Source: Gracilinanus agilis (taxonomy: Eukaryota). From it: a stretch of DNA of 64,000 bases. Shown piece after piece: positions 6,471 through 59,903 of this stretch. The notes below the pieces were generated by a model, which saw only the letters and a list, made by a program, of their open reading frames with translations, had not been told where the DNA came from and searched no databases. Numbering within the stretch: position 1 is the first letter of the stretch; every line of letters begins with the position of its first letter. The translations under genes and the position numbers were made by a program. The stretch spans positions 495,115,252 to 495,179,251 of the forward strand of contig NC_058133.1 in assembly GCF_016433145.1 (NCBI RefSeq). Direction: 5' to 3'.

Positions 6471-6564
6471 TGCTAGTGCAACAGCCCAGTCAGAAATTGA
6501 TAGATAGTGTAGACCTGGGGAAAGGCACATTTTATATGATTGAACTTATTTCCCTCCTTCCCTT

Positions 6565-6915
6565 CCTTTCCCCCTCCAGTATAGGCAGGCAATTTGATCT
6601 GGGTTATACGTGTATTATCATGCAAACATATTTTGATATTGTTCATTTTTGTGAGTAATCTTATAAAACAAAACCCCAAAACATAAATCCAAATAAACAA
6701 TTGAAAAATTATATGCTTTCATTAGCATTTCGACTCCAACAGTTCTTTCTCTGGAGGTGAATAGCGTTCTTTGTCCTAAGTCCCTTAGAATTGTCCTGGA
6801 TCATTGTATGGCCAATAATAGCTGTCTGTTGCATTTGATCATTCCACAATATTGCTGTTACTATGTATAATGTTTCCCTGGTTCTGCTTATTTCGCTCTG
6901 TATCAGTTCATGAAG
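6565..6915 (-). mobile_element. L1 3'UTR fragment
   Basis: gatctgggttatacgtgtattatcatgcaaa...gtcctggatcattgta; similar to the L1 3' end at 46.9-47.3 kb. Confidence 0.85.
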
Positions 6916-7244
6916 GTCTTGGAATGGGATCTTTTGATAGATCAGTGATCTCTTTTATGTGATCTCTTTCTCCCTCAAATGGGGGGTGGATACATACCTT
7001 CTCATCCTGCATACCTCTTGTTCATTTTGCCCCATAAATCTTCCACAGCCAAAATGGGAGGAGCATCTCATGCCCTTAACATGCTAGGGACTTTCCTTCA
7101 GATCCATTGGCATTGTGTGGATGCCAATGGAGCATAGTAACCATTATCCCTCATTTTTGATGCATGATCTGCTCCTGCCTAGTCACTCAAACTCTGTGAC
7201 CTTTTTTGGGAGGGCAGTTTACTTAATCCCACCATTAAATTACA

Positions 7245-12072: not shown

Positions 12073-13154
12073 AAATGATGATGATGAAAACTATTATTTA
12101 TATATGCTTTAAGGGTTACACTTTATTTACATTATTTCATTTGCTTCTTATAGCCATCCTGAGAGGTAGATGCAATTATTATTCTCATTTTATAGATGAG
12201 GAAAATGAGGCAAAGAAAAAAAATTATTTGCCCAGGATCACTCAACCTCTCCTTGTTGCCTGTGTGACCTTGGGTGAGTCCCTTCACCTCCCTCAATCTC
12301 ACTTTCCTTAATGAGGAGATTGGACTGGATGACTTTTAAGGTCCCCTTTCGCTTTAAATCTAAAAAGACAGAAGAAGAAAGTCTGATTTCTATCCCCAAG
12401 GAGCCTTTTCATTTGCTTGGCCTGATTTCTTTCCATTTTTTTTTTTTAAGGCAGAATCTGCTCATTTGTAGGGTTTGAAATCTCGCCAGTCGCTATTGTC
12501 CAGTGCTGAGGGTTGCTCGGAGGGAGCTATTTACCCAACCCTTGCAGACAACTCCCAGGCCCCTTCCTGCCACTGTGGCAACCCCCAGAGTGCCGTGAGG
12601 CCAGGGTAGCCAGGAGTCTAATCTAGGGCATCCGAGGCCATACCGGGGCTCAGTGAGGTTGGTATCTTCAGATTCTACCTTTCCCTGACTGGCGGGAAGC
12701 ATTTCAGGGGACTGGAAGAGCCAAACAGAAGTTGGAAAGCAGCGACTTGGCACCCTTTAGTGGAGCCCAGCTCAGGGAGGCATCTTTTCTCACTGCCCTC
12801 CCCAAGATGCTGTCAGCTGGGTGTGACCCAAGGTTTATGACTCCAGCATATTCGATTTCTTAGAGCTCAGAGCATATGTCAAGTGAATTCTGTGTCTCTG
12901 GCAGGTTATTACGCATTGAATTAGTATGATAAAATAAAAACTGTAATAAAACTGTACCGCACTCTTAAATTGTTAAAATTTATTATCAAATGTGCATAGT
13001 TATTAACTGATTTCCCGTGGCTGGTGCTCGCCTGAGTGCCGAGCCGGGGAGGATGAAAAGTAACTCTGTCAAGGCAAGCCGGAGCTAGAGTCTTTGGAAC
13101 TCCCAAGAGATTCCCAAATGGAGCAGCCGCTGCCTTATTTGGATCCCTCGCCTC

Positions 13155-13350
13155 TAAGTGTGGGACTCAGCGTGGTACAGTGGGAAATGACCCGGGCTCT
13201 AGTCAGAGGACCCAAGTTCAAATCCCACCTCGGACACTCATGATCGCAGAACCTGGGGCGAATGACATCAACTCTCTGATCCTTAGCAGGACTGGCGGAT
13301 TCCAAGGTTTCTTTAGGCTTTGAATTGATGATTCTGTGACAAATTTCCAC
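13155..13350 (+). mobile_element. MIR with unusually many CpGs
   Basis: gcgtggtacagtgg...gacccaagttcaaatcccacctcgg head. Confidence 0.72.
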
Positions 13351-18689: not shown

Positions 18690-20340
18690 ATCAATCTAAG
18701 AAACATTTACTAAGCACCTACTATGTGCCAGACACTCGACTAGGAAATGGGGGGAAACAATGACAGTTTCTATTCTCAAAGAGTTTATTTTCTACTTAGG
18801 GATACAGATGAGTAAATACATGGGAATTTGGGGAAGAGGAGAGCTCCAACTAATGAGCTAGGGATAGGGAATCAATCAATCAATCAATACATTAACAATC
18901 ATTTTCTGATCCCCTACTATGTGCCAGCCATTATGCTAAGCAGAGGGGACCAAAATACAAAATGAAACTGTCCTTGCCCTTGTTCTGTCAGGGGAGACAA
19001 GGCGTATGTATTTGTTGGGCGATTGTTTTTCAGTCAAGTCCATCTCTTGGTGACTCCATTTGGAGGGTTCTTGGCAAAGATGCTGCCATTTCCTTCTCCG
19101 GCTCATTTGACATGTGAGGAACGTGAAGCAAACAAGGTTGAGTGACTTTCTCTGGGACACACAGCGAATGTCTGAGGCTGGATTTGAATTCACGAAGATG
19201 AGTCTTCCTGACTCCAGTCCAGCGCTCTAGCTACTGTGCCACCTGGCTGCCCCACGTAAAAGTATATAGAAAAGAAATACAGGGTAATTTTGGAGAGAGG
19301 AAGGGCACTGGCAGAAGGGAAGACTAGGAAAGGTTTCCTGTAGAAGGTGAGCTGAGTTTTAAAGGAAAATAGAGATGCTAAGAGGAAGAAATAAGAAGGG
19401 GATACTTTTCAGAAATGAGGGTTGGCTAGGGCAAAGTCTCAGAGATGGGAAATGGGGAATTGGGAGTGAGGAATAGCAAGAAGGGCAAGTTGTCTAGGCT
19501 ATAGAAGGCAGAAAGGAGAGAATGTACAATAAGATTGGGAAAGATAGATGGAGGCGGGATTGTAAAGCATTTTAAAATGCCAAATAATAGTCTGTATTTG
19601 ATCTTAGAGGGAAAAGGGAGCCACTGGAGTTTATTGAGCAGTGGAGCAACTCGGTCAAATTTGGGTTTGCCATTTTGGTAGCTGAGTGGAGAATGGATCG
19701 GAGAGAGCAAGGCTTTATGTAATGGTCGAACATTGGAAGAAGTCAAGGGAAGTGGAGATGAGGAGGAAATATATCCTGGGCATAAGGGATGGCCAGGACA
19801 AAGATGTAAAGATGGAGTGTTGAGTTCAGAGGGCAATTTGGCTAAAATATAGTATTTGTGAAGAGGTTTAGTATGAAATACATACAGGTAGATAGATAGA
19901 AGCCTGGTTATAGGAATTTGTATTTTTTCCCAGAGGCAACAGAAAGCCACTGAAAATCTGGAGGAGAATTATGGTAAGACGTGTGCCTTGGGAAGGCATG
20001 GAGGATGGATTGGAGAGTGGAGAAGCTTGAAGTTAGGAGGCTATTGAAATAGCTGCTGGCCATGTAAGAGCTATCACACTTTTAAGCACCACATGGATGT
20101 TATTATTATTATCATCTGAATAAAGAAAAAGGAAAAGTTGAGAGATGTAAAGGAAGCACCAATGAGACTTAGTAATTGATGAGATATGGTGGTGTGATGG
20201 GTCAAAGATGACTACAATTTCTAAGCTAAGAGACTGAATCTGGCATCCTCAACAGAAATAAGGAAGTTTAGAGGAGGGGCAGGTGCAGATGGAGGGGAAA
20301 TTTTGGACAGGTGGAATTTGAGACGTCTGTGGGACATTTG
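18690..20340 (-). mobile_element. L2 fragments (two 3' tails plus ~1.1 kb body) interrupted by a MAR1 (~19015-19252)
   Basis: catttactaagcacctactatgtgccag tails; the 174-aa minus ORF contains LLNKLQWLPFPSKIKYRLL, an L2 ORF2 C-terminal motif. Confidence 0.85.
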
Positions 20341-22276: not shown

Positions 22277-22468
22277 TTTTTTTTTTTTTTTTTTAACCCT
22301 TAACTTCTGGGTATTGGCTCCTAGGTGGAAGAGTGGTAAGGGTGGGCCATGGGGGTCAAGTGACTTGCCCAGGGTCACACAGCTGGGAAGTGGCCGAGGC
22401 CGGGTTTGAACCTAGGACCTCCCGTCTCTAGGCCTGACTCTCCATCCACTGAGCTACCCAGCTGCCCC
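22277..22468 (-). mobile_element. Young SINE1-type SINE
   Basis: Long T tail; perfect 15-bp TSD cataggtcctctttt (22262-22276, 22469-22483). Confidence 0.95.
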
Positions 22469-22739
22469 CATAGGTCCTCTTTTGTAGGACTTTGCTTTTA
22501 TTTTTGAGGGGAGCACTAGAGAAAGGTCAACAAGATTTCTTTAATTATGTACCAGGTACTCTGCTAAGTTCTGAGGATAGAAAGGAAAGCAAAAACAATC
22601 CCTGGCCTCAAGGAGTATCCATTCTAATAGGGAAGACATCAAGTAAATAACTAGGTACAAAGAAGATCTATACAATATAGCAAAGGTAATCTGAGAGAGG
22701 AAGGTACTATCAGTGGATGGGGACCAAGATAGGCCTCTT

Positions 22740-22936
22740 GGGGCAGCTGGGTGGCTCAGTGGATTGAGAGTCAGGCCCAGAGACAGGAGGTCCTGGGTTC
22801 AAATCTGGTCTCAGACACTTCTTAGCTGTGTGACCCTGGGCAAGTCACTTAACCTCCATGGCCTAGTTCTTCCTGCCCTTCTGCCTCAGAACTAATACAC
22901 AGTATTGATTCTAAGACAGTAGGTAAGGGTTAAAAA
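22740..22936 (+). mobile_element. SINE1_Mdo-like SINE
   Basis: Full copy. Confidence 0.92.
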
Positions 22937-23149
22937 GAAGGAGTGGATTTTGAAGGGAATCTTTATTTTCTTTGAAATAATTGGTGTTTAATTTACTAAA
23001 TTTATTAAAAGAATATAAAATAGGTAATATAAGGCTCTAATGAAGGGTCACAATGGACTATATTATCTTCTTTTGGAGTTATCAATTATTTTAATTATTT
23101 TATATAACATAATATAACATGTCATTTATTATAAACATAATAAATCATA

Positions 23150-23530
23150 ATAAGTATGCTTATTCAATAGCTCACACATTAGATATGTTTAAAAATCTAT
23201 GTCTCATTCTTTTTTCTCCCTTCCCTCCTCCCCAAGAAGGCAGGTAATAGGACAAAGATTATACATATATTGTCATATAATACACATTTTCTTGTTCATG
23301 TTGTGAAACGAGACACATATTGCTTATACCAGAGAAAAATTCACGGGGGAGATAAATTGAAGAATGGCGGGCTCCAATCAGCATTCAGCCTTATGGCACG
23401 GAATGCCCTTTTCTCCAGGAGTCCCTTCGAGTTGACCTGGTCCTTGCTTTGTTGATAATGGTCAAGTCCTCCGGAGCTGATCGTTTTCTCGGTTCTGCTC
23501 CCTTCGCGTCGCCTGGCGTCACGGACATCT
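23150..23530 (-). mobile_element. L1 3'UTR fragment, GC-shifted in its right half
   Basis: Colinear with the L1 3' ends at 6565-6915 and ~47100-47270. Confidence 0.65.
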
Positions 23531-24020
23531 TTGCGGCTCTTCGGGGATCGTCTCGTTTCTGTCCTTTCTTCTGGCGTGATGGCGTTCCGTTACAATCCTC
23601 TGCCACGACTTGTTCAGTTGTTCGTTGATCATCTCTTGGCTTCCCGCTTCTTTTGAAGAGAATCTCAAAGGAAGACGAGGAAACGAAGAGGGAGAGATGA
23701 GGGAGAAGAACGCTGCCGGCATGGCAGACCGGCACGGAGGTGGGAGATGGGGCTGGAGGAGCTCTGGCCAGGCTAGTCTAGCTGGATCACGGAGTGCCCA
23801 GAGGAGGAGAACACGCAAGAAGCCTGGGAGCCTCCAGGGTCGAGGACGGCTTCGTGTAGAAGGACTCTCAAAGCAAATGAGGGGTTCTGAGAGGCTGACA
23901 TAAAAAGGAAATCCATTTTCGGTGGAGGATCGCCAGCACATTTCTTGGAGATTGTCTATGATGCGTGAACAGCGGTCAGGGGCCAGAATGTCTGACGATG
24001 GAGTCCCCTGAGGGGAGCGA
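23343..24020. promoter_or_regulatory. Orphan intronic CpG island
   Basis: About 39 CpGs counted in ~680 bp against a strongly CpG-depleted background. Confidence 0.7.
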
Positions 24021-24250
24021 AGTAGGATGAGGCTGGAGAGGCAGGTGGGGGTCAGGCTCTGAAGGCTTTAAAGGCTGAACAGAGGACTGAATGTTTGCTC
24101 CTTGAGGTCACTGGAATTTATCACGTAGGAGAGAGGCAGGGCAGGATTCACACTTAAAGAAATTCACTTTTGAAGCTATGAGGAAGACTGACTGAAGAGG
24201 GGAGAGGCTTGAGGCAATGAGATCGATGAGGAAGCTGTTGCAATAATGTC
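23640..24250 (-). mobile_element. L2 fragments, CpG-rich
   Basis: gatgaggctggagaggcaggtgggggtcaggctctgaaggc is a typical antisense L2 motif. Confidence 0.7.
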
Positions 24251-24289
24251 TTTAAAAAACAACATCCCCCCCTCCACCTGCCCCCCAAC

Positions 24290-24477
24290 ACTCACCTTCT
24301 TTCTTAGAGTCAATACGGTGCATTGGTTCTAAGGCAGAAGAGTGGTAAAGGCTAGGCAATGGAGGTTAAGTGACTTGCCCAGGGTCCCACAGCTGGGAAA
24401 TGTCTGAGGTCAGATTTGAACCCAGCATTTCTCATCTCAAATCCTGGCTCTCTATCCACTGAGTTTTCTTGCTGCTC
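24290..24477 (-). mobile_element. SINE1_Mdo-like SINE
   Basis: Antisense tail, CORE and head. Confidence 0.88.
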
Positions 24478-37768: not shown

Positions 37769-37966
37769 AGTCTGGGCACCTTCGCTGCTGATCCCTTGAT
37801 GGGCTTACAAATCTCTGGGAAAATAGCGCACCGGCTCCAGCTACCTGATGCGGCTACCAGAGCAACATGGAGAGGGGCCACCCCAGCACCAAGAAAAGGG
37901 AAGCAGAGGGTCCCCCGGAGGGAGCGAGGAGCGGCGGAGAAGCCAGGCCCCCGACTTTCCTACCTG
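37769..37966 (+). other. Candidate 198-nt alternative exon with a GC-AG donor
   Basis: T-rich tract plus ttttgcag acceptor; CCTG|GCAAGT donor; CpG-enriched and TE-free. Confidence 0.35.
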
Positions 37967-39327
37967 GCAAGTTTCCCCTCCAATATTCCTTTCCCAAGCC
38001 CTTCACCTGGAGGAATAAGTTTTCTGGAGGGATTGGTCGCCAGAAATGGGACTGGGTTACAGTTCTTGAGGGAGGAAGTGTGTGGCTGTGTGTTTGTGAG
38101 TGTGGATGTGTGGATGGGGGTTAGGGGGGCAGGATGGGTCTCATGCCAGGTTGGGAGTGGGGAGAGAACGGAGGAGAGGAGACCCTTGTCCAGATCCAAG
38201 TCATGGGGAGTTGGGGAGAATGGACAGCTATCCCAGTTGGAAAGCAGATATTGTAATAAACCTTCTGAGTCTGGCTGGTTTGAATTGATGATATTTACAG
38301 CCCCAGAGGAGAGCTTCAGCACTGCCTGTAGCACTAGCTTACAGAGAGTGGATCTCCTAGGGTGTTTTTCTGCCTTAAGAATGAAAAAAAAAAAACCAGG
38401 GGGGAGGGCGTGGATCCGGGAGGGTGAGACTCCCTCCAGACTCTGGCACCCTATCTACGGGGTGCTGGTGATGCACCTAACACAGGATGAGAAGGATATT
38501 CCACTCACCAGAGGCCCTGGTTTTTCCTGATTCCTGAGCTGGTGTGGGTTTGGGGAGAGTTTGCCTTTTCCTTCTCTCCAACCTGCTTATTAATTTTTCC
38601 GCATGGAGACATTCAAGGTGGTGAGAAATGCTTTCAAAACGTAAAGGAAAGGAGGGGAAATGGAAAAAGCCAAAGCCCCAAATAAAGCCTCCTTTTTCTG
38701 GCTCCTGCCTGCCCCCAGCCCCCCAAAATCACTGCCTCTGATGGGCTTCTGAAGCTTCCCAACAGTCCGAACCCTTTCCAAGAAATGAAAGAAGAGCTGA
38801 AGATGAAACAAAGAGAGGGGGAATGTCAGCTTGGAGCTGGTTTGGCAGGGAGCTGATTTCTGGCCAAGGAATACTGCTGTCAACCAGGAATCTGCCTGTT
38901 GCCGGCTCTGGAAGGAACTGACCAAGGGCTTTTGGAGGCTTATTTTTCTATCTCTTTCAATAGTTCCCATGTGATCTTCGATCTAGAGCTGAGAGGACCT
39001 CAGCCTTCATCCAGCCTAACCTCCTCATTTTATGGAAGAAGAAACTGAGGCTCAAGGAATGGAAGAGACTTGTCCAAGATCACACAAGTTGGATCAGAAG
39101 TGAGATCTGAACCCAGGTCCTCTGATTCTAAAGCCCGGTGTTCTTTCCAGGGAATCATGCTGGTGGACAAAACTGTTTATAGTTTGGGCTTGAACAAGCT
39201 AAGGGGTCATAGGAATAACTGTTAGGGAGAAGATCAGGAAAAGCAGAACAGAGACAACCTTTTAATAATGTCCCAACTTTGAAGAATCCAGCCTTTTGTT
39301 TTTTACTTTTCTACCCAGGAATCAGCA

Positions 39328-39330
<3 letters not shown>

Positions 39331-39384
<54 letters not shown>
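39331..39384. repeat. (GT)n microsatellite
   Basis: Read directly. Confidence 0.97.
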
Positions 39385-39386
<2 letters not shown>

Positions 39387-39699
39387 GGGCATGGTTTGAA
39401 GCAAAAACACAGGCTCAGGAGCCATATAAATCCTGAACCCAATAAATCTCCTTGTAATAGAAATTTGGTATCTGAGAGAAAGAAAAGGAAGGAGGGCACA
39501 GCCAGCTGGTTAATGGGAAATGTTCCATAGTGGAGTGGTTCTTCCTCTTCCTTCTTCCATGAGTCTAACTTTAGAGTGATAGAAGATTGGAGGGAGGCAG
39601 AAAATGAGAGGCTTCAGAGAGCCTGCAGCATTTAGGAAGTCAGGCACGCTATCTCAAGGGCAGATAAAGCACCATGGTTCATCCACTTATAAATGTTAG

Positions 39700-45676: not shown

Positions 45677-45849
45677 NNNNNNNNNNNNNNNNNNNNNNNN
45701 NNNNNNNNNNNNNNNNNNNNNNNNNNNNNNNNNNNNNNNNNNNNNNNNNNNNNNNNNNNNNNNNNNNNNNNNNNNNNNNNNNNNNNNNNNNNNNNNNNNN
45801 NNNNNNNNNNNNNNNNNNNNNNNNNNNNNNNNNNNNNNNNNNNNNNNNN
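45677..45849. other. Assembly gap (173 N)
   Basis: Read directly. Confidence 1.
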
Positions 45850-46850: not shown

Positions 46851-49109
46851 TAAAATTTTATTTATTTATTTAGAATATTTTCCCATAGTTACATGATTCA
46901 TGATCTTTCCCACCCCTTTTCCCTCCCTACTCCTGGAAATGACAAGCAATTCCACTGGGTTATACACGTATCATTGTTCAAAACCCATTTCCACATTATT
47001 CCTATTTGCAATAGAGTGATCTATTAATGTCAAAATCCCAATCATGTCCCCATCAGACCATGTGATCAATGATATGTTTTTCTTCTGCATTTCTGTTCCC
47101 ACAGTTCTTTCTCTGGATGGGGATAGCATTCTTTCTCCTAAGTTCCTTAGAATTTTCCTGGATCATTGCATTGGTGCTAGAGGAAAAGTCTGTTACATTT
47201 GATTGTACCACAATGTATCCATCTCTGCCTACAACATTTTCCTGGTTCTGTTCCTTTTGCTCTACATCAATTCCTGGAGGAGTTTCCAGTTCATATAGAA
47301 TTCCTCCAGTTCATCATTTCTTTCAGCACTATAGTATTCCACCATCATCATATACCACAATTTGTTCAGCCATTCCCCAATTAATGGACACCCCCTCATT
47401 TTCCAATTTTTTTTGCCATCACAAAGAGCATGGCTATAAATATTTTTGTACAGGTATTTTTCCTTATTATCTCTTTGAGGTACAAACCCAGCAGTGGTAG
47501 GGATGGATCAAAGGGCAGGCATTCTTTTAAAGCCCTTTGGGCAGAATTCCAAATTGCTTTCCAGGATGTTTGGATCAATTTACAACTCCACCAACAATGT
47601 GTTAGCTTCCCAATTTTGCCACATCCCCTCCAACATCTCTCATTTTCCTTTGCTGCCATATTCTCCATTCTACTTTTTGTGAAGGGGTACCTCAAAGTTG
47701 TTTTGATTTGCATTTTCTAATCAAGAGGGATTTAGAATACTTTTTCATGTAATTATTGATAGCTTTGATTTCTTCATCTGAAAACTGCCTATTCATATCC
47801 CTTGACCATTTGTCAATTGGGGAATGGCTTGATTTTTTTGTAAATTTGACTTAGTTCCTTATATATTTGGGAAATTAAACTTTTGTCATAAAAATGTTTT
47901 CCCACTTCGTTGCTTTCTTTCTCATTTTGGTTGCATTGATTTTGCTTGTACAAAACCTTTTTAATTTAATATAATCAAAATTATTTATTTTATATTTTAT
48001 AATGTTCTCAATCTCTTTCTTGGTCTTAAATGCTTTCCTTCCCCATAGGTCTGACAGATAAACTATTTTATGTTCACTTAATTTATGATTTCACTCTTTA
48101 TATTTAGGCCATTTACCCATTTTGACTTTATCTTGGCATAGGGTGTGAGATGTTGATCTAAACCTGATTTTTCCCATACTGTTTTACAATTTTCCCAGCA
48201 ATTTTTGTCAAATAGTGAGTTCTTGCCTCCCAAAGCTGGGATCTTTGGGTTTATTGAACTCTAGCTTGTGGAGGTCATTTACCTCTAGTCTATTGCATTG
48301 ATCCATCCTTCTCTCTCTTAATTAGTACCATATTGTTTTGATGATCACTGCTTTACATACAGTTTAAGACCTGGTATTGCTAGGCCATCATCCTTCACAT
48401 TTTAAAAATTATTTTCCTTGATATTCTTGATCTTTTTTCATCAAGATAAACTTTGTTATAATTTTTTTCTATAACAAAGTTTCTTGGGAGTTTGATAGGT
48501 AGGGCACTGAATAAATAGATTAATTTGGGTAGGATTGCCATTTTCATTATATTAGCTCATCCTACTCATGAGTAATTAATGTTTTTCCAATTATTTAGGT
48601 CCAGTTTTAATTTTGTGAAAAGTGTTTTGTAGTTGTGTTCATATAATTCCTATGTTTGTTTTGGCAGATAGATTCCTAAATATTTTATATTGTCTAGAGC
48701 AGTGATGGGCAAACTTTTTAAAGAGGGGGCCAAAGGAAAGGAAATGTTCATTTGTCAATCTGTTTCTAAGGCAAATCTTTCAAAGTTTCGTTGTATTGTA
48801 TCCTACTCATTGTATTCCTCAGATTAGGAATAATGTCCTGCAGCTGGATAGAACATTTCAGGGGACCACATCTGACCCTCTGGCTGGGCAGTAGTTTGCC
48901 CATCACTGGTCTAGAGTGATTTTAAATCAAGTTTCTCTTTCTAACTCTTGTTGCTGAGTTTTGTTGGAAATATATAGAAATGCTAATGATTTACATCGAT
49001 TTATTTTGTACTCTGCAACTATGCTAAAGTTGTTCATTTTTTCATTAGCCATTTAGTTGATTTTCTAGGATACTTTAAGTATACCATCATATCATTTGCA
49101 AAGAGTGAT
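46851..49109 (-). mobile_element. 5'-truncated L1 (3'UTR plus ORF2 C-terminal ~2 kb)
   Basis: MQIKTTLRY...CWRGCGKIGKLTHCWWSCKLIQ is the L1 ORF2 C-terminal cysteine-rich region; probable TSD g(t/c)agatgc. Confidence 0.95.
48700..48908. mobile_element. Non-autonomous hAT MITE (209 bp) inside the L1
   Basis: TIRs CAGTGATGGGCAAACT / AGTTTGCCCATCACTG; perfect TSD GTCTAGAG (48692-48699, 48909-48916). Confidence 0.95.
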
Positions 49110-53756: not shown

Positions 53757-53988
53757 ACTATTGTTCAGTTGTGTCTGACTCTTCCTGACTCCACTGGAGT
53801 TTTATCTTGGCTAAGCCACTGGAGTGGTTTGGCACTTCCTTCTCCAGATCATTTGACAGATGAGTAACTGAGGAAAACAGGGTCAAGTGACTTGTCCAGG
53901 GCCACATAGCTAGTCAGAGTCTGAGACTAGATTTGAACTCAGGCAGATGAGTCTGGCACTCTAACCACTGTACCACGCAGCTGCCCCA
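53757..53988 (-). mobile_element. MAR1 SINE
   Basis: Full antisense copy. Confidence 0.9.
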
Positions 53989-54129
53989 AATAAAGCTCCC
54001 TCCAAGATTTAAACTCAGATGATTAGATTGAGAGTCCAGAGTGCTAATCATTACACCAAGAGGGTCACTATATTAAGAGACTAAGCAAAGCAAGGAATTG
54101 TATCAGAACAATAAAACATGAACTCAGTT

Positions 54130-55590
54130 CAAATTTATTTGATTCAATAAGCATTTGTTGAGTGACTATTAGATGCCAGGCACTGAGGATACAGAGGGAA
54201 AAACATAAATAAAGCATGCATTCTATTGGGATTAAACAACATCTGTGCAGATAAATAAATACATAATACATACACAATTAAGAGAAGGAGGCCGGGCTTT
54301 TTGTTTTTGTTGTTGTTGGGGGGAATATTAACAATGGACAAATCATGAAATTCAGACATTAGCATTTTTTTGAACACCCTCCATGTGCCAGGGACTAAGG
54401 ATATGAAGGAAAAAATTAAACAATCTTTGCCCTTAAGGAAATCATTTTTTGATAGAGAGAAAATAACTATATATGAATATATATTGATAGATTCAAATAT
54501 ATACTAAATATGTTTGGGCCTTTTAAGTCATTAAAGCTAAGACTTTTGAAAGACCCCATTTATGGTAATTTGGGGTTTAAGAGAATAAGAGGTGCTGCAA
54601 TAGACTCATATGGGAGGTAGCCCTTGAGCTGAGTTTTGAAGGAAGCCAAGGATTCTAGGAGGCAGAGGTGAGGAGAAAGTATTCTAGGAATGAAGGACAG
54701 CTTTCTACCCAAAGGCACACAAGTAGGAGATGGAATGTGTGTAAAGAGAACAGCAAGAAGCTTCATTTGGCTGGAACAGAGAGTGCAGAAAGAAGAATAA
54801 TGTGTAACAAGCTAGGAAAGGTACAGGGCAGCCAGATTGCAAAGGGTTTTAAATGCCAGAGGAGTTCCATTTCTCACTTTGGGCATTTTCACTGGCTGGA
54901 AAACTTCCCTCCTCATCTTTGCCTCCTGCCTTCCCTGCCTTCCTTTTAGTCTCAGTTCTAGACTGATATTCTGCAAGAAGCCTTTCCTGATCTCCCTTAA
55001 TGTTCATACCTCCCCTCTGTTTATGATCTCCATTTTTTTCCCCTGCAGATTGAGCTTGTTTGTAAATAGTTGCTTGAATGTTGCCTCTGCCTATTTGACC
55101 ATGAGCTCCTTGAGAGCAGGAAATGTCTTTTTTCCTGCCTTTGTAACCCCAGCACTTAGCACAGTGCCTGACACATGGTGGATGCTTGATCAATGTCAGT
55201 TGACTGTTTTATAAGCAAGAGAGATCCACAGCAGCTTTTTGAGAAAGGGGATGCCTACATATTAAGAACATCTGTCTGATAGTCATTTGGAGGATGGAGT
55301 GGAGAGAAGAGAATCTTAAGGCAAAAAAAATTATGCTATTTCAATAGTCTAAGAGAGAGGCGATAAAGACTTGAATTAGAGACATGACTAGTGTGAGAGA
55401 AGGGTCCTGATGAGAAGGTTGTTGTAGAAATAGAATGGATAAGACGGGGCACCTGGTTAGCTGTGAAGGATGAGGGAGAGGAATAAGAGTGAAAGGTGAC
55501 CCCAAGATGGTGAAAATAGTTATGTGGAAGATGTCATCTTTAACAGAAGTGGGACAATAGGAAAAGCCTTTTTTAGGACAGAAATGAATC
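54130..55590 (-). mobile_element. L2 fragments (antisense 54130-54900 and 55200-55590; sense 3' end ~54960-55200)
   Basis: L2 tails and body motifs. Confidence 0.78.
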
Positions 55591-58387: not shown

Positions 58388-58831
58388 TTTTTTTTTAAAT
58401 TTTAAGCATTTATTGCTTCAGTATTCTTTTTTAAAAGTTTAATTCATTAATTAATTAAGAATCTTTTCCCACGGTTCCATGATTCATGTTCTTTCCCTCC
58501 TCTCCTCCCTCTCCCCTCCCATAGCCAGTGTGCAATATCACTGGGTTTTACATGTGTCATTGATCAAGACCTATTTCCATATTATTGATATTTGCGCTGG
58601 GGTGATGGTTCAGTGTCTACATCCCCAATCATCTTCCCATCAACCCATGTGATCAGGCAATTGTTTTTCTTCTGTGTTTCTGCTCCCACAGTTCTTTCTC
58701 TGGATGTGGATAGCATCTTTCTCATAAGTTCCTCTTTATTGTCCTGGATCATTGCAGTGCTGCTAGTAGAGAAGTCCATTACATTCGATTGTGCCACAGT
58801 ATATCAGTCTTTGTGTACAATGTTCTCCTTC
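58388..58831 (-). mobile_element. 5'-truncated L1 3' end
   Basis: TSD aac(t/c)aagaaatctt (58374-58387, 58832-58845). Confidence 0.92.
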
Positions 58832-59255: not shown

Positions 59256-59634
59256 CCAGCCAACTAGCTAGTATTTAATATTTTAAATTCAATCCAATCA
59301 AAACTTCTATGAATTATATACAGTGAGCAAGACATTGTTCTAGGTGCTGAGATCCCAGTGTGAACAATGACATGGAATATCTCTCAAGGACTCTATAGCC
59401 CACTAGCATATACACAGATAAGCATTCTTATATGCACCTACATACTCTGACACAGGGTAGAGGGTGATAAGGTTAAACGAGGGACAAAATGCTTAAGAAA
59501 ACTCAATGGCAATGGAATAAGGAGACTTGGGTTCAAATCCTACCTCTGATACCTGCTGCTATCTGATCTATGTCAAGTCACTGAACCTGTCTGGACATCA
59601 GATTCCTCCTTTGTCAAGATTAGATAGCCTCCAA

Positions 59635-59903
59635 CTTGGGAGAAAGAACATTATCCACATCCAGAGAAAGAACTGTGGGCACAGAAATGTATTAGAAAAA
59701 CATATGATCAATCATGTAGTTGGATGAGGATATGATTGGGGTTTTGATGTTAAAGGATTGTTCTACTGCAAATATGAATAACACAGAAATTGGTTTTGAA
59801 CAGGATAACTGCTTGTCAGCTTTGGGAGGGGGGAGGAAAGAGCAGGTAGGGGGGAATGTATCTTGAATCATGTAACCATGGAAAAATATTTTAAATTTAA
59901 AAA
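59635..59903 (+). mobile_element. 5'-truncated L1 3' end inserted in a MIR
   Basis: 19-bp TSD aagattagata(g/a)cctccaa (59616-59634, 59904-59922). Confidence 0.92.

What the first reader, a model, noticed from the sequence alone, without database searches (positions are those of the whole stretch)
23343..24020. Orphan CpG island built across two unrelated ancient TE fragments
About 39 CpGs in ~680 bp span an L1 3'UTR remnant and L2 remnants. Homologous L1 and L2 pieces elsewhere in the window are nearly CpG-free. Against the 47.1-kb L1 copy (tagcattctttctcctaagttccttagaattttcctggatcattgcattgg), this copy (aatgcccttttctccaggagtcccttcgagttgacctggtccttgctttg) looks shifted toward G/C. The effect crosses a TE junction, so it was acquired in place. 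Inference: long-term germline hypomethylation and/or GC-biased gene conversion at a stable recombination hotspot. Alternatives are an exapted intronic promoter/enhancer or a TE-derived DMR.
Basis: partly seen in the sequence, partly recalled or inferred. Interest (0 to 1): 0.7.

Follow-up and report, generated by a model that had tools for sequence, protein, structure and literature searches.

The report
Orphan CpG island on old transposons
A 0.7-kb CpG-rich patch in this opossum-type genome evolved in place out of dead L1 and L2 transposon fragments, most likely because it has stayed unmethylated in the germ line for a very long time; it is a clear example of a well-known kind of feature (an "orphan" CpG island), not a new kind.

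Summary
Window 23343-24020 has 39 CpGs, GC 0.546 and CpG O/E 0.79, against 0.165 for the whole window (Poisson P about 6e-15). It meets both standard CpG-island definitions.

It lies on a 5'-truncated antisense L1 (ORF2 C-terminus plus 3'UTR) that abuts an L2-like 3' fragment. Both alignments run straight through the island's edges, so the CpG richness arose in place.

- **GC shift:** against other L1 copies the island part shows W>S 65 to S>W 33, on both strands. The same L1's flank shows 24:26. The L2 part is shifted the same way (39:18).
- **No CpG decay:** the CpG count (21) equals the count expected with no CpG decay (19.5 ± 3.2). Simulation excludes CpG hypermutability of 3-fold or more. 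That points to long-term germline hypomethylation plus a moderate GC-favouring force.
- **gBGC:** it is plausible but not shown. The younger SINEs flanking the island show no W>S excess.
- **Function:** I found no promoter motif grammar, coding signal, Rfam family or protein homologue.
- **Unexplained:** TpA is strongly depleted over the island (O/E 0.26).

Reads and cross-species data could not be obtained, so methylation, transcription and recombination remain untested.

The scan has already noted orphan CpG islands elsewhere in this genome (AVIL and UNC79 introns). This is a new member of a known kind.

The parts
23343..24020 (.). CpG island as reported (39 CpG, GC 0.546, O/E 0.79, TpA O/E 0.26); densest core 23450-23650
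23160..23640 (-). Old 5'-truncated L1 fragment read antisense on the + strand: 3'UTR remnant (23160-~23470, CpG-free up to 23342) and ORF2 C-terminal remnant (~23470-23640). The island covers 23343-23640 (21 CpG, O/E 1.00)
   Evidence: nhmmer/MAFFT against four other L1 copies; translation shows the INEQLNKSW remnant matching IGEWLNKLW of the 47-kb copy
23641..24250 (+). L2-like 3' fragment. 23641-24020 lies inside the island (18 CpG, O/E 0.67); 24021-24250 lies outside it (2 CpG, O/E 0.18) but is still GC-shifted relative to other L2 copies
   Evidence: weak colinear nhmmer matches to 54621-55345 and 19332-20058; S/W asymmetry; composition
22755..22931 (-). Flanking MIR-type SINE copy (0 CpG), the left arm of a chance inverted pair. 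It marks ordinary CpG-depleted DNA 410 bp left of the island
24287..24463 (+). Flanking MIR-type SINE copy (1 CpG), the right arm of the inverted pair, 270 bp right of the island. It shows no W>S excess

Best explanation
This is a genuine orphan CpG island of about 0.7 kb. It formed in place by point substitution on an old, 5'-truncated antisense L1 fragment and the adjoining L2 3' fragment.

Shown from the sequence: over its history this stretch did not suffer the CpG-to-TpG/CpA hypermutation that stripped the rest of the window. New CpGs created by ordinary substitutions therefore survived, and CpG reached the frequency expected from base composition.

Inferred: the stretch has been unmethylated in the germ line for a long time. 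It would be a canonical 'hypo-deaminated' island, kept clear by whatever binds there and, once CpG-dense, by CxxC-domain/H3K4me3 feedback.

A moderate GC-favouring force acted in addition. The W>S rate per site rose about 1.4-fold and the S>W rate fell about 1.8-fold compared with the same L1's flank, symmetrically on both strands, giving an equilibrium GC of about 0.57. The most likely source is GC-biased gene conversion at an unmethylated, promoter-like 'default' recombination site, as described for dogs. Selection or another island-intrinsic bias is not excluded.

Its present function (enhancer-type orphan island, unannotated promoter, or gamete DMR) is undetermined. The sequence has no canonical promoter grammar.
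For: - **Island and uniqueness:** the island is real and unique in the window.
- **In-place origin:** L1 and L2 alignments are colinear across both island edges. Divergence from the L1 majority is similar inside (45%) and outside (50%) the island.
- **New CpGs:** the majority of other L1 copies has 0 CpG over the 298 bp where this copy has 21. About half sit where the others have TG/CA; the rest need transversions or two changes.
- **No CpG decay:** permuting the derived bases among sites with the same ancestral base gives 19.5 ± 3.2 CpG against 21 observed. Forward simulation with fitted rates gives 19.1 CpG at hypermutability k=1, P = 0.06 at k=2, P = 0.023 at k=3, and no run in 300 reaching 21 at k of 5 or more. 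TpG and CpA are not in excess (0.94 and 0.98, against 1.13 and 1.14 in the window).
- **GC shift:** W>S 65 to S>W 33 in the L1 part, against 24:26 in the flank and 107:99 in controls. A>G is 23 and T>C is 24, so both strands are affected. The L2 part gives 39:18.
- **Literature frame:** canonical unmethylated islands with low deamination versus methylated BGC islands (PMC8286816); orphan-island gain by substitution, TE or gBGC (PMC11170920); unmethylated islands attracting recombination and gBGC in dogs, which lack functional PRDM9 (PMC4350167); the marsupial PRDM9 found so far lacks a KRAB domain (PMC5519329).
Against:
- The ancestral state is approximated by only one to four younger L1 copies from the same window, possibly of other subfamilies. 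From about 23530 rightwards only one copy is available. The L2 alignments are weak.
- No orthologous sequence was available to polarise the changes.
- The GC-bias statistics are modest (P about 0.02-0.035).
- The flanking younger SINEs show no W>S excess. Any gBGC was therefore tightly confined or is old.
- No SP1, NRF1, ETS, E-box or CTCF cores are present that would explain protection from methylation.
- The strong TpA depletion (4 observed against 12.6 ± 2.7, P = 0.0005) is not explained by this model.
Confidence: 0.6

Rival explanations
1. It is an exapted regulatory element under selection: an unannotated promoter with first exon, or an enhancer-type orphan island. TF binding would create the unmethylated state and selection would keep the G/C and CpG content. 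This overlaps the best explanation; it differs in making function the cause.
For: Roughly half of mammalian CpG islands are orphan, and many act as promoters or enhancers (PMC8286816, PMC11170920). There is a TATA-like ATAAAA at 23900 with one moderate 5' splice site (CAG|GTGGGG) at 24045 on the + strand. There is a YY1-like ATGGCGG core at 23364 and two CRE half-sites. The TpA depletion hints at some constraint beyond base composition.
Against: There is no SP1, NRF1, ETS, E-box, full CRE, E2F or CTCF core and no donor site on the - strand. No listed sequencing run holding the stretch is on record as RNA (weak evidence). The CpG count fits neutral expectation exactly, with no CpG-specific enrichment. 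There is no Rfam family, no Pfam domain, no protein relatives and no codon periodicity.
Confidence: 0.2
2. It is a methylated 'BGC island'. Strong GC-biased gene conversion at a recombination hotspot would have raised GC and CpG despite normal germline methylation.
For: W>S is about twice S>W on both strands and across two unrelated TEs. The GC shift extends a little beyond the CpG-rich part into 24021-24250.
Against: BGC islands show rapid deamination (PMC8286816). Here CpG hypermutability of 3-fold or more is excluded, CpG O/E is 1.0-1.4 at only 50-58% GC, and there is no TpG/CpA excess. Overall divergence is not elevated relative to the flank. The flanking SINEs show no W>S excess.
Confidence: 0.1
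3. It is a TE-derived gamete differentially methylated region: methylated in oocytes by transcription running through it and unmethylated in sperm, possibly imprinted. CpGs would survive because the male germ line, where most mutations arise, leaves it unmethylated.
For: Opossum oocyte-specific DMRs (22,921) are enriched in intragenic regions and CpG islands, and 85 persist into adult tissues (PMC12221971). A promoter-like GC-rich region with a possible first exon lies 22 kb upstream on the + strand, so the island may be intronic.
Against: There is no direct evidence. The host transcript is not identified. There is no ZFP57-type TGCCGC motif, although marsupials lack ZFP57 anyway (PMC12221971). 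Lasting imprints are rare compared with the number of orphan islands.
Confidence: 0.08
4. It is an artefact or a young insert: a misassembly, a contaminant, or a single young CpG-rich repeat family.
For: None specific. The reference copies used are few.
Against: L1 and L2 homology is continuous across both island boundaries. The L1 piece is about 45-50% diverged from other copies both inside and outside the island. There is no second copy in the window. One public DNA data set holds 82% of the sampled 31-mers of 22900-24400, though it may be the source sample.
Confidence: 0.02

Closest known systems
Orphan (inter-/intragenic) CpG islands and their evolutionary turnover (PMC8286816; PMC11170920)
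   Same: It is a short CpG island away from any recognised gene start. It is lineage-acquired and built by substitutions on pre-existing, TE-derived sequence, which are the gain routes that PMC11170920 proposes.
   Different: No chromatin, methylation or transcript evidence is available here. The motif grammar is unusually poor. The species is a marsupial, which those surveys left out (opossum was excluded in PMC11170920).
Canonical unmethylated, 'hypo-deaminated' CpG islands (the class of Cohen et al. as summarised in PMC8286816)
   Same: CpG sits at neutral expectation, there is no TpG/CpA excess, and CpG hypermutability is inferred to be at most 2-fold.
   Different: The unmethylated state is inferred from sequence evolution only.
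gBGC-generated CpG islands at PRDM9-independent hotspots in dogs (PMC4350167)
   Same: The island is non-genic with a W>S excess. The lineage's PRDM9 may be incomplete (KRAB-less in Tasmanian devil, PMC5519329), so unmethylated sites could attract recombination.
   Different: The W>S excess is modest. Overall substitution rate is not increased. The flanking SINEs are unaffected. No recombination data exist here.
TE-associated germline DMRs / novel CpG islands at imprinted loci (cited in PMC11170920; opossum gamete DMRs in PMC12221971)
   Same: It is a new CpG island on TE-derived DNA, possibly intragenic.
   Different: In that model the island usually arrives with a CpG-rich insertion. Here it grew by substitution on CpG-poor TE remnants. 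Parent-of-origin methylation is untested.

Membership tests
CpG island (sequence definition) | At least 200 bp, GC at least 0.50, CpG O/E at least 0.60 (Gardiner-Garden & Frommer) | tested here: met
   678 bp, GC 0.546, O/E 0.79
CpG island (sequence definition) | At least 500 bp, GC at least 0.55, O/E at least 0.65 (Takai & Jones) | tested here: met
23365-24090: 726 bp, GC 0.551, O/E 0.71.
Orphan CpG island | Not at the start of a known gene or RNA | tested here: inconclusive
   No Pfam domain, protein relative, Rfam family or codon periodicity. No genome annotation was available, and the host or neighbouring gene was not identified.
Non-methylated island (biochemical definition) | Unmethylated CpGs in germ line or soma (CAP-seq, bisulfite) | not testable with these tools
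   There is only indirect evolutionary evidence: CpG at the no-decay expectation and k of 3 or more excluded.
gBGC tract / recombination hotspot | Clustered W>S excess over S>W | tested here: met
   65:33 in the L1 part (P about 0.02-0.035) and 39:18 in the L2 part, on both strands. The polarity rests on paralogous TE copies, not on orthologues.
gBGC tract / recombination hotspot | Elevated recombination or DSB signal, a W>S skew in allele frequencies, and a footprint in neighbouring sequence | tested here: inconclusive
   Recombination and polymorphism are not testable. The neighbouring SINEs show no W>S excess (7:9 and 6:12).
CpG-island promoter | Promoter motif grammar (SP1, NRF1, ETS, YY1, CRE...) and a TSS with a downstream splice donor | tested here: not met
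   There is only one YY1-like core, two CRE half-sites, one CCAAT and one moderate donor at 24045. TSS data are unavailable.
Imprinted / gametic DMR | Opposite methylation in sperm and oocyte, retained after fertilisation | not testable with these tools
   Data sets exist (PMC12221971) but could not be queried from here.
Young CpG-rich transposon copy | Low divergence from its family, with CpGs inherited from the consensus | tested here: not met
   45-50% divergence from the L1 majority. The majority has 0 CpG where this copy has 21.

The most novel reading that the evidence does not exclude
In opossums, whose PRDM9 may lack the KRAB domain, meiotic breaks may default to small unmethylated patches. 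A self-reinforcing loop (unmethylated, then recombination, then gBGC, then more G/C and CpG, then more firmly unmethylated) would build CpG islands from scratch out of dead transposons, as inferred for dogs. This locus, with its accompanying TpA loss, would be a dated example, because the ancestral L1 and L2 sequences are known.
Probability: 0.2. Interest if true: 0.55.

Novelty: new member of a known kind. Interest (0 to 1): 0.3.

Why it matters
The starting material is recognisable. It is a CpG-free L1 ORF2/3'UTR remnant and an L2 tail, with sister copies in the same window, so the locus shows base by base how a CpG island can be born by substitution rather than by insertion. It also separates two ingredients: the absence of CpG decay and a moderate GC bias. 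That makes it a useful worked example for CpG-island turnover in marsupials. It is also a concrete place to test whether unmethylated orphan islands are recombination sites in a lineage with an atypical PRDM9. It does not reveal a new kind of element.

Tried and rejected
- **Reads:** There is therefore no RNA, depth or cross-species read evidence. Three earlier calls did touch them. The listing of open frames covered the whole window. Two local nhmmer runs on the closed machine used the whole window as target, though never those places as query.
- **Protein search:** a word search with the 140-aa open frame found nothing. Pfam found nothing for three island ORFs and two others. Rfam found nothing in the island.
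- **Coding exon:** rejected. There is no codon periodicity. The 182-codon open frame (P = 0.0145 against mononucleotide shuffles) is a by-product of TpA depletion.
- **ADAR/APOBEC-type editing of the L1 RNA:** rejected. A>G and T>C are equally frequent, and the shift also affects the L2 part.
- **Foldback or long-TIR element:** the 177-nt inverted repeat around the island is not one. The arms are two copies of a SINE family with 42 hits in the window.
- **Tandem repeats:** none.
- **Host gene:** not identified from open frames.

Full report
**1. The observation**

Window 23343-24020 (678 bp) holds 39 CpGs at GC 0.546, giving a CpG O/E of 0.79. The whole 64-kb window has GC 0.417 and O/E 0.165. 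At the window's O/E only 8.1 CpGs would be expected (Poisson P = 5.5e-15).

In 100-bp steps the core 23450-23650 reaches O/E 1.2-1.4. The 650 bp to the left (22600-23250) has no CpG at all, and CpG falls back to background right of about 24020. The stretch meets the Gardiner-Garden/Frommer definition, and 23365-24090 meets Takai-Jones.

Only two other patches in the window are mildly CpG-enriched. One is 1100-1900 (O/E 0.4-0.5), a promoter-like region. The other is 12990-13310.

**2. What the DNA is made of**

nhmmer and MAFFT align 23215-23629 colinearly with the 3' ends of L1 copies at 46881-47700, 58467-58828, 6534-6919 and 59631-59882. All of these are antisense on the + strand.

Translating the minus strand shows the degraded ORF2 C-terminus: INEQLNKSW... 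here against IGEWLNKLW... in the 47-kb copy. The CpG-dense L1 part is therefore the ORF2 end plus the start of the 3'UTR, not the 3'UTR alone.

Right of about 23640 the sequence matches L2-like pieces at 54621-55345 and 19332-20058, weakly but colinearly (E 0.008-0.27).

Both TE alignments run through the island's edges. The L1 continues leftward into a CpG-free, AT-rich 3'UTR (23160-23342, O/E 0.22). The L2 continues rightward to about 24250 (O/E 0.18). The homologous L1 and L2 pieces elsewhere have O/E 0.00-0.38.

This L1 copy is about as diverged from the majority of the other copies inside the island (55% identity) as outside it (50%). So it is an old fragment, not a young CpG-rich element, a contaminant or a misjoin. 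One public DNA data set, possibly the source sample, holds 82% of the sampled 31-mers of 22900-24400.

**3. Direction of change**

I took the majority of the other L1 copies as a proxy for the ancestral state.

| Region or copy | W>S | S>W | W>S per W site | S>W per S site |
|---|---|---|---|---|
| Island part 23343-23660 | 65 | 33 | 0.39 | 0.30 |
| Same element, flank 23200-23342 | 24 | 26 | 0.27 | 0.55 |
| Four other copies, each against the rest | 107 (pooled) | 99 (pooled) | 0.11-0.17 | 0.13-0.30 |

Fisher tests of the island against the flank and against the pooled controls give P = 0.035 and P = 0.019.

GC rose from 0.40 in the reference to 0.51 here. A>G (23) and T>C (24) are equally common. 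That argues against strand-specific RNA or DNA editing of the L1 before insertion.

Of the 65 W>S changes, 22 end up in present-day CpGs and 43 do not.

In the L2 part, high-confidence alignment columns split 39 (this copy S, other copy W) to 18 inside the island. A similar but weaker asymmetry continues to 24250.

**4. CpG behaviour**

The majority L1 string has no CpG over the 298 bp where this copy has 21. About half of these CpGs sit where the other copies have TG or CA. The rest need a transversion or two changes, for example TA, AT, AG or CT in the other copies.

I shuffled the derived bases among sites that share the same ancestral base. This keeps the mononucleotide substitution pattern and gives 19.5 ± 3.2 CpGs. 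The observed number is thus what is expected if CpG is neither specially lost nor specially favoured. TpG, CpA and GpC are also at expectation.

A forward simulation from the reference string, with rates fitted to the data and an extra factor k on CpG transitions, gives the following.

| k | Mean CpG | P (21 or more CpGs) |
|---|---|---|
| 1 | 19.1 | 0.35 |
| 2 | 15.2 | 0.06 |
| 3 | 12.7 | 0.023 |
| 5 | 9.6 | 0 of 300 runs |
| 10 | 5.5 | 0 of 300 runs |

From general knowledge, methylated mammalian germline DNA has k of about 10 or more. Averaged over its history, this stretch therefore behaved as unmethylated DNA.

This is the signature of canonical low-deamination islands, not of methylated BGC islands, which show rapid deamination (PMC8286816).

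**5. Is there gBGC?**

Loss of CpG decay alone cannot explain the change at non-CpG ancestral sites. Relative to the same L1's flank, W>S rose about 1.4-fold and S>W fell about 1.8-fold. The implied equilibrium GC is about 0.57. So a GC-favouring force is needed.

gBGC at an unmethylated site is the obvious candidate. In dogs, which lack functional PRDM9, unmethylated islands attract recombination, and gBGC has created many non-genic islands (PMC4350167). The marsupial PRDM9 described so far lacks the KRAB domain and does not evolve rapidly (PMC5519329).

I could test one prediction inside the window. The two SINE copies flanking the island (22755-22931 and 24287-24463) belong to a family with 42 hits in the window. 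Against the majority of 18 copies they show 7:9 and 6:12 (W>S:S>W), in the middle of the family's range. Whatever favoured G/C was therefore either confined to within roughly 0.3-0.4 kb of the island or acted before these SINEs inserted. gBGC remains plausible but unproven.

**6. Function**

There is nothing coding or structured here.
- Pfam finds nothing for the three island ORFs.
- The word-based protein search finds no relative.
- Rfam finds nothing in the island.
- The 182-codon open frame shows no codon periodicity.

The island also lacks SP1, NRF1, ETS, E-box, E2F, full CRE, CTCF and ZFP57-type cores. It has one YY1-like core (23364), two CRE half-sites, one CCAAT and a TATA-like ATAAAA at 23900.

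The only reasonable 5' splice site nearby is CAG|GTGGGG at 24045 on the + strand. A short first exon from about 23930 to 24045 is imaginable but is speculation.

No listed run holding the stretch is on record as RNA, which is weak evidence.

A GC-rich, promoter-like region with a CAG repeat and a possible short first exon lies at about 850-1150 on the + strand. The island may therefore be intronic, but I could not identify the gene.

Opossum oocyte DMRs are enriched at intragenic CpG islands (PMC12221971), so a gamete DMR cannot be excluded.

**7. An unexplained extra**

TpA is depleted exactly over the island. There are 9 against 34.9 expected (O/E 0.26). This is the lowest value of any 700-bp window; other windows with GC above 0.52 average 0.48.

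In the L1 part, 15 ancestral TpAs have fallen to 4, against 12.6 ± 2.7 expected from the permutation (P = 0.0005). Four ancestral TA sites are now CG. Neither hypomethylation nor context-free gBGC predicts this.

**8. Limits**

I worked beside those places and kept them out of the database searches.
- The ancestral states come from a few paralogous TE copies, not from orthologues.
- The L2 alignments are weak.

**9. Comparison and verdict**

This is an orphan CpG island of the canonical low-deamination type, born by substitution on TE remnants, with a moderate GC bias of unproven origin. Gain of orphan islands by substitution, TE or gBGC is already described (PMC11170920, PMC4350167).

The scan has already noted orphan islands elsewhere in this opossum-type genome, in the AVIL and UNC79 introns. 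This one is a new member of a known kind and a clean, datable example, of modest interest.

Noticed in passing
window 23343-24020: TpA is depleted exactly over the island (9 against 34.9 expected, O/E 0.26, the lowest value in the window). In the L1 part 15 ancestral TpA fell to 4, against 12.6 ± 2.7 expected (P = 0.0005). No mechanism is known to me.
   Followed up: partly
window ~850-1150 (context 1-2000): GC-rich (0.57), mildly CpG-enriched (O/E 0.33-0.43) promoter-like region. It has an imperfect CAG repeat (~858-923, non-coding in all frames), an ATG in good context at 1110, and a GT donor at 1148-1149 (13 codons). It is a possible first exon of an unidentified + strand gene, 22 kb upstream of the island.
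   Followed up: partly
window 12990-13310: Second small CpG-enriched patch (13 CpG, GC 0.53, O/E 0.57). It partly overlaps a SINE-like sequence that still carries CpGs. It may be a younger SINE copy or a weak island.
   Followed up: no
window 22755-22931 and 24287-24463: A 177-nt inverted repeat (80% complementary, 1355 nt apart) brackets the L1/L2 island. The arms are two copies of a MIR-type SINE family with 42 hits in the window, so the arrangement is probably chance.
   Followed up: yes
window 22301-22453: This SINE copy has the strongest W>S excess of 18 family copies (15:4, GC 0.59, 3 CpG). It lies about 0.9 kb left of the island and may be a second, separate GC-shifted spot.
   Followed up: no
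window 37800-39400: Non-repeat, GC 0.46-0.50 stretch with long open frames on both strands (no Pfam hit), a small CpG cluster around 37820-37960, and low TpA (O/E 0.29-0.41 at 38300-39400). It could be a conserved non-coding or exonic element.
   Followed up: no
window 53994-54065 (-): tRNA-like match just above the Rfam threshold (31.4 bits against 29). It lies next to a SINE hit at 53856-53970 and is probably a tRNA-derived repeat rather than a gene.
   Followed up: no
window 45677-45849: A run of 173 N (assembly gap or mask), left untouched.
   Followed up: no
They lie inside a SINE-rich stretch and were not sent to any database search afterwards.
   Followed up: no
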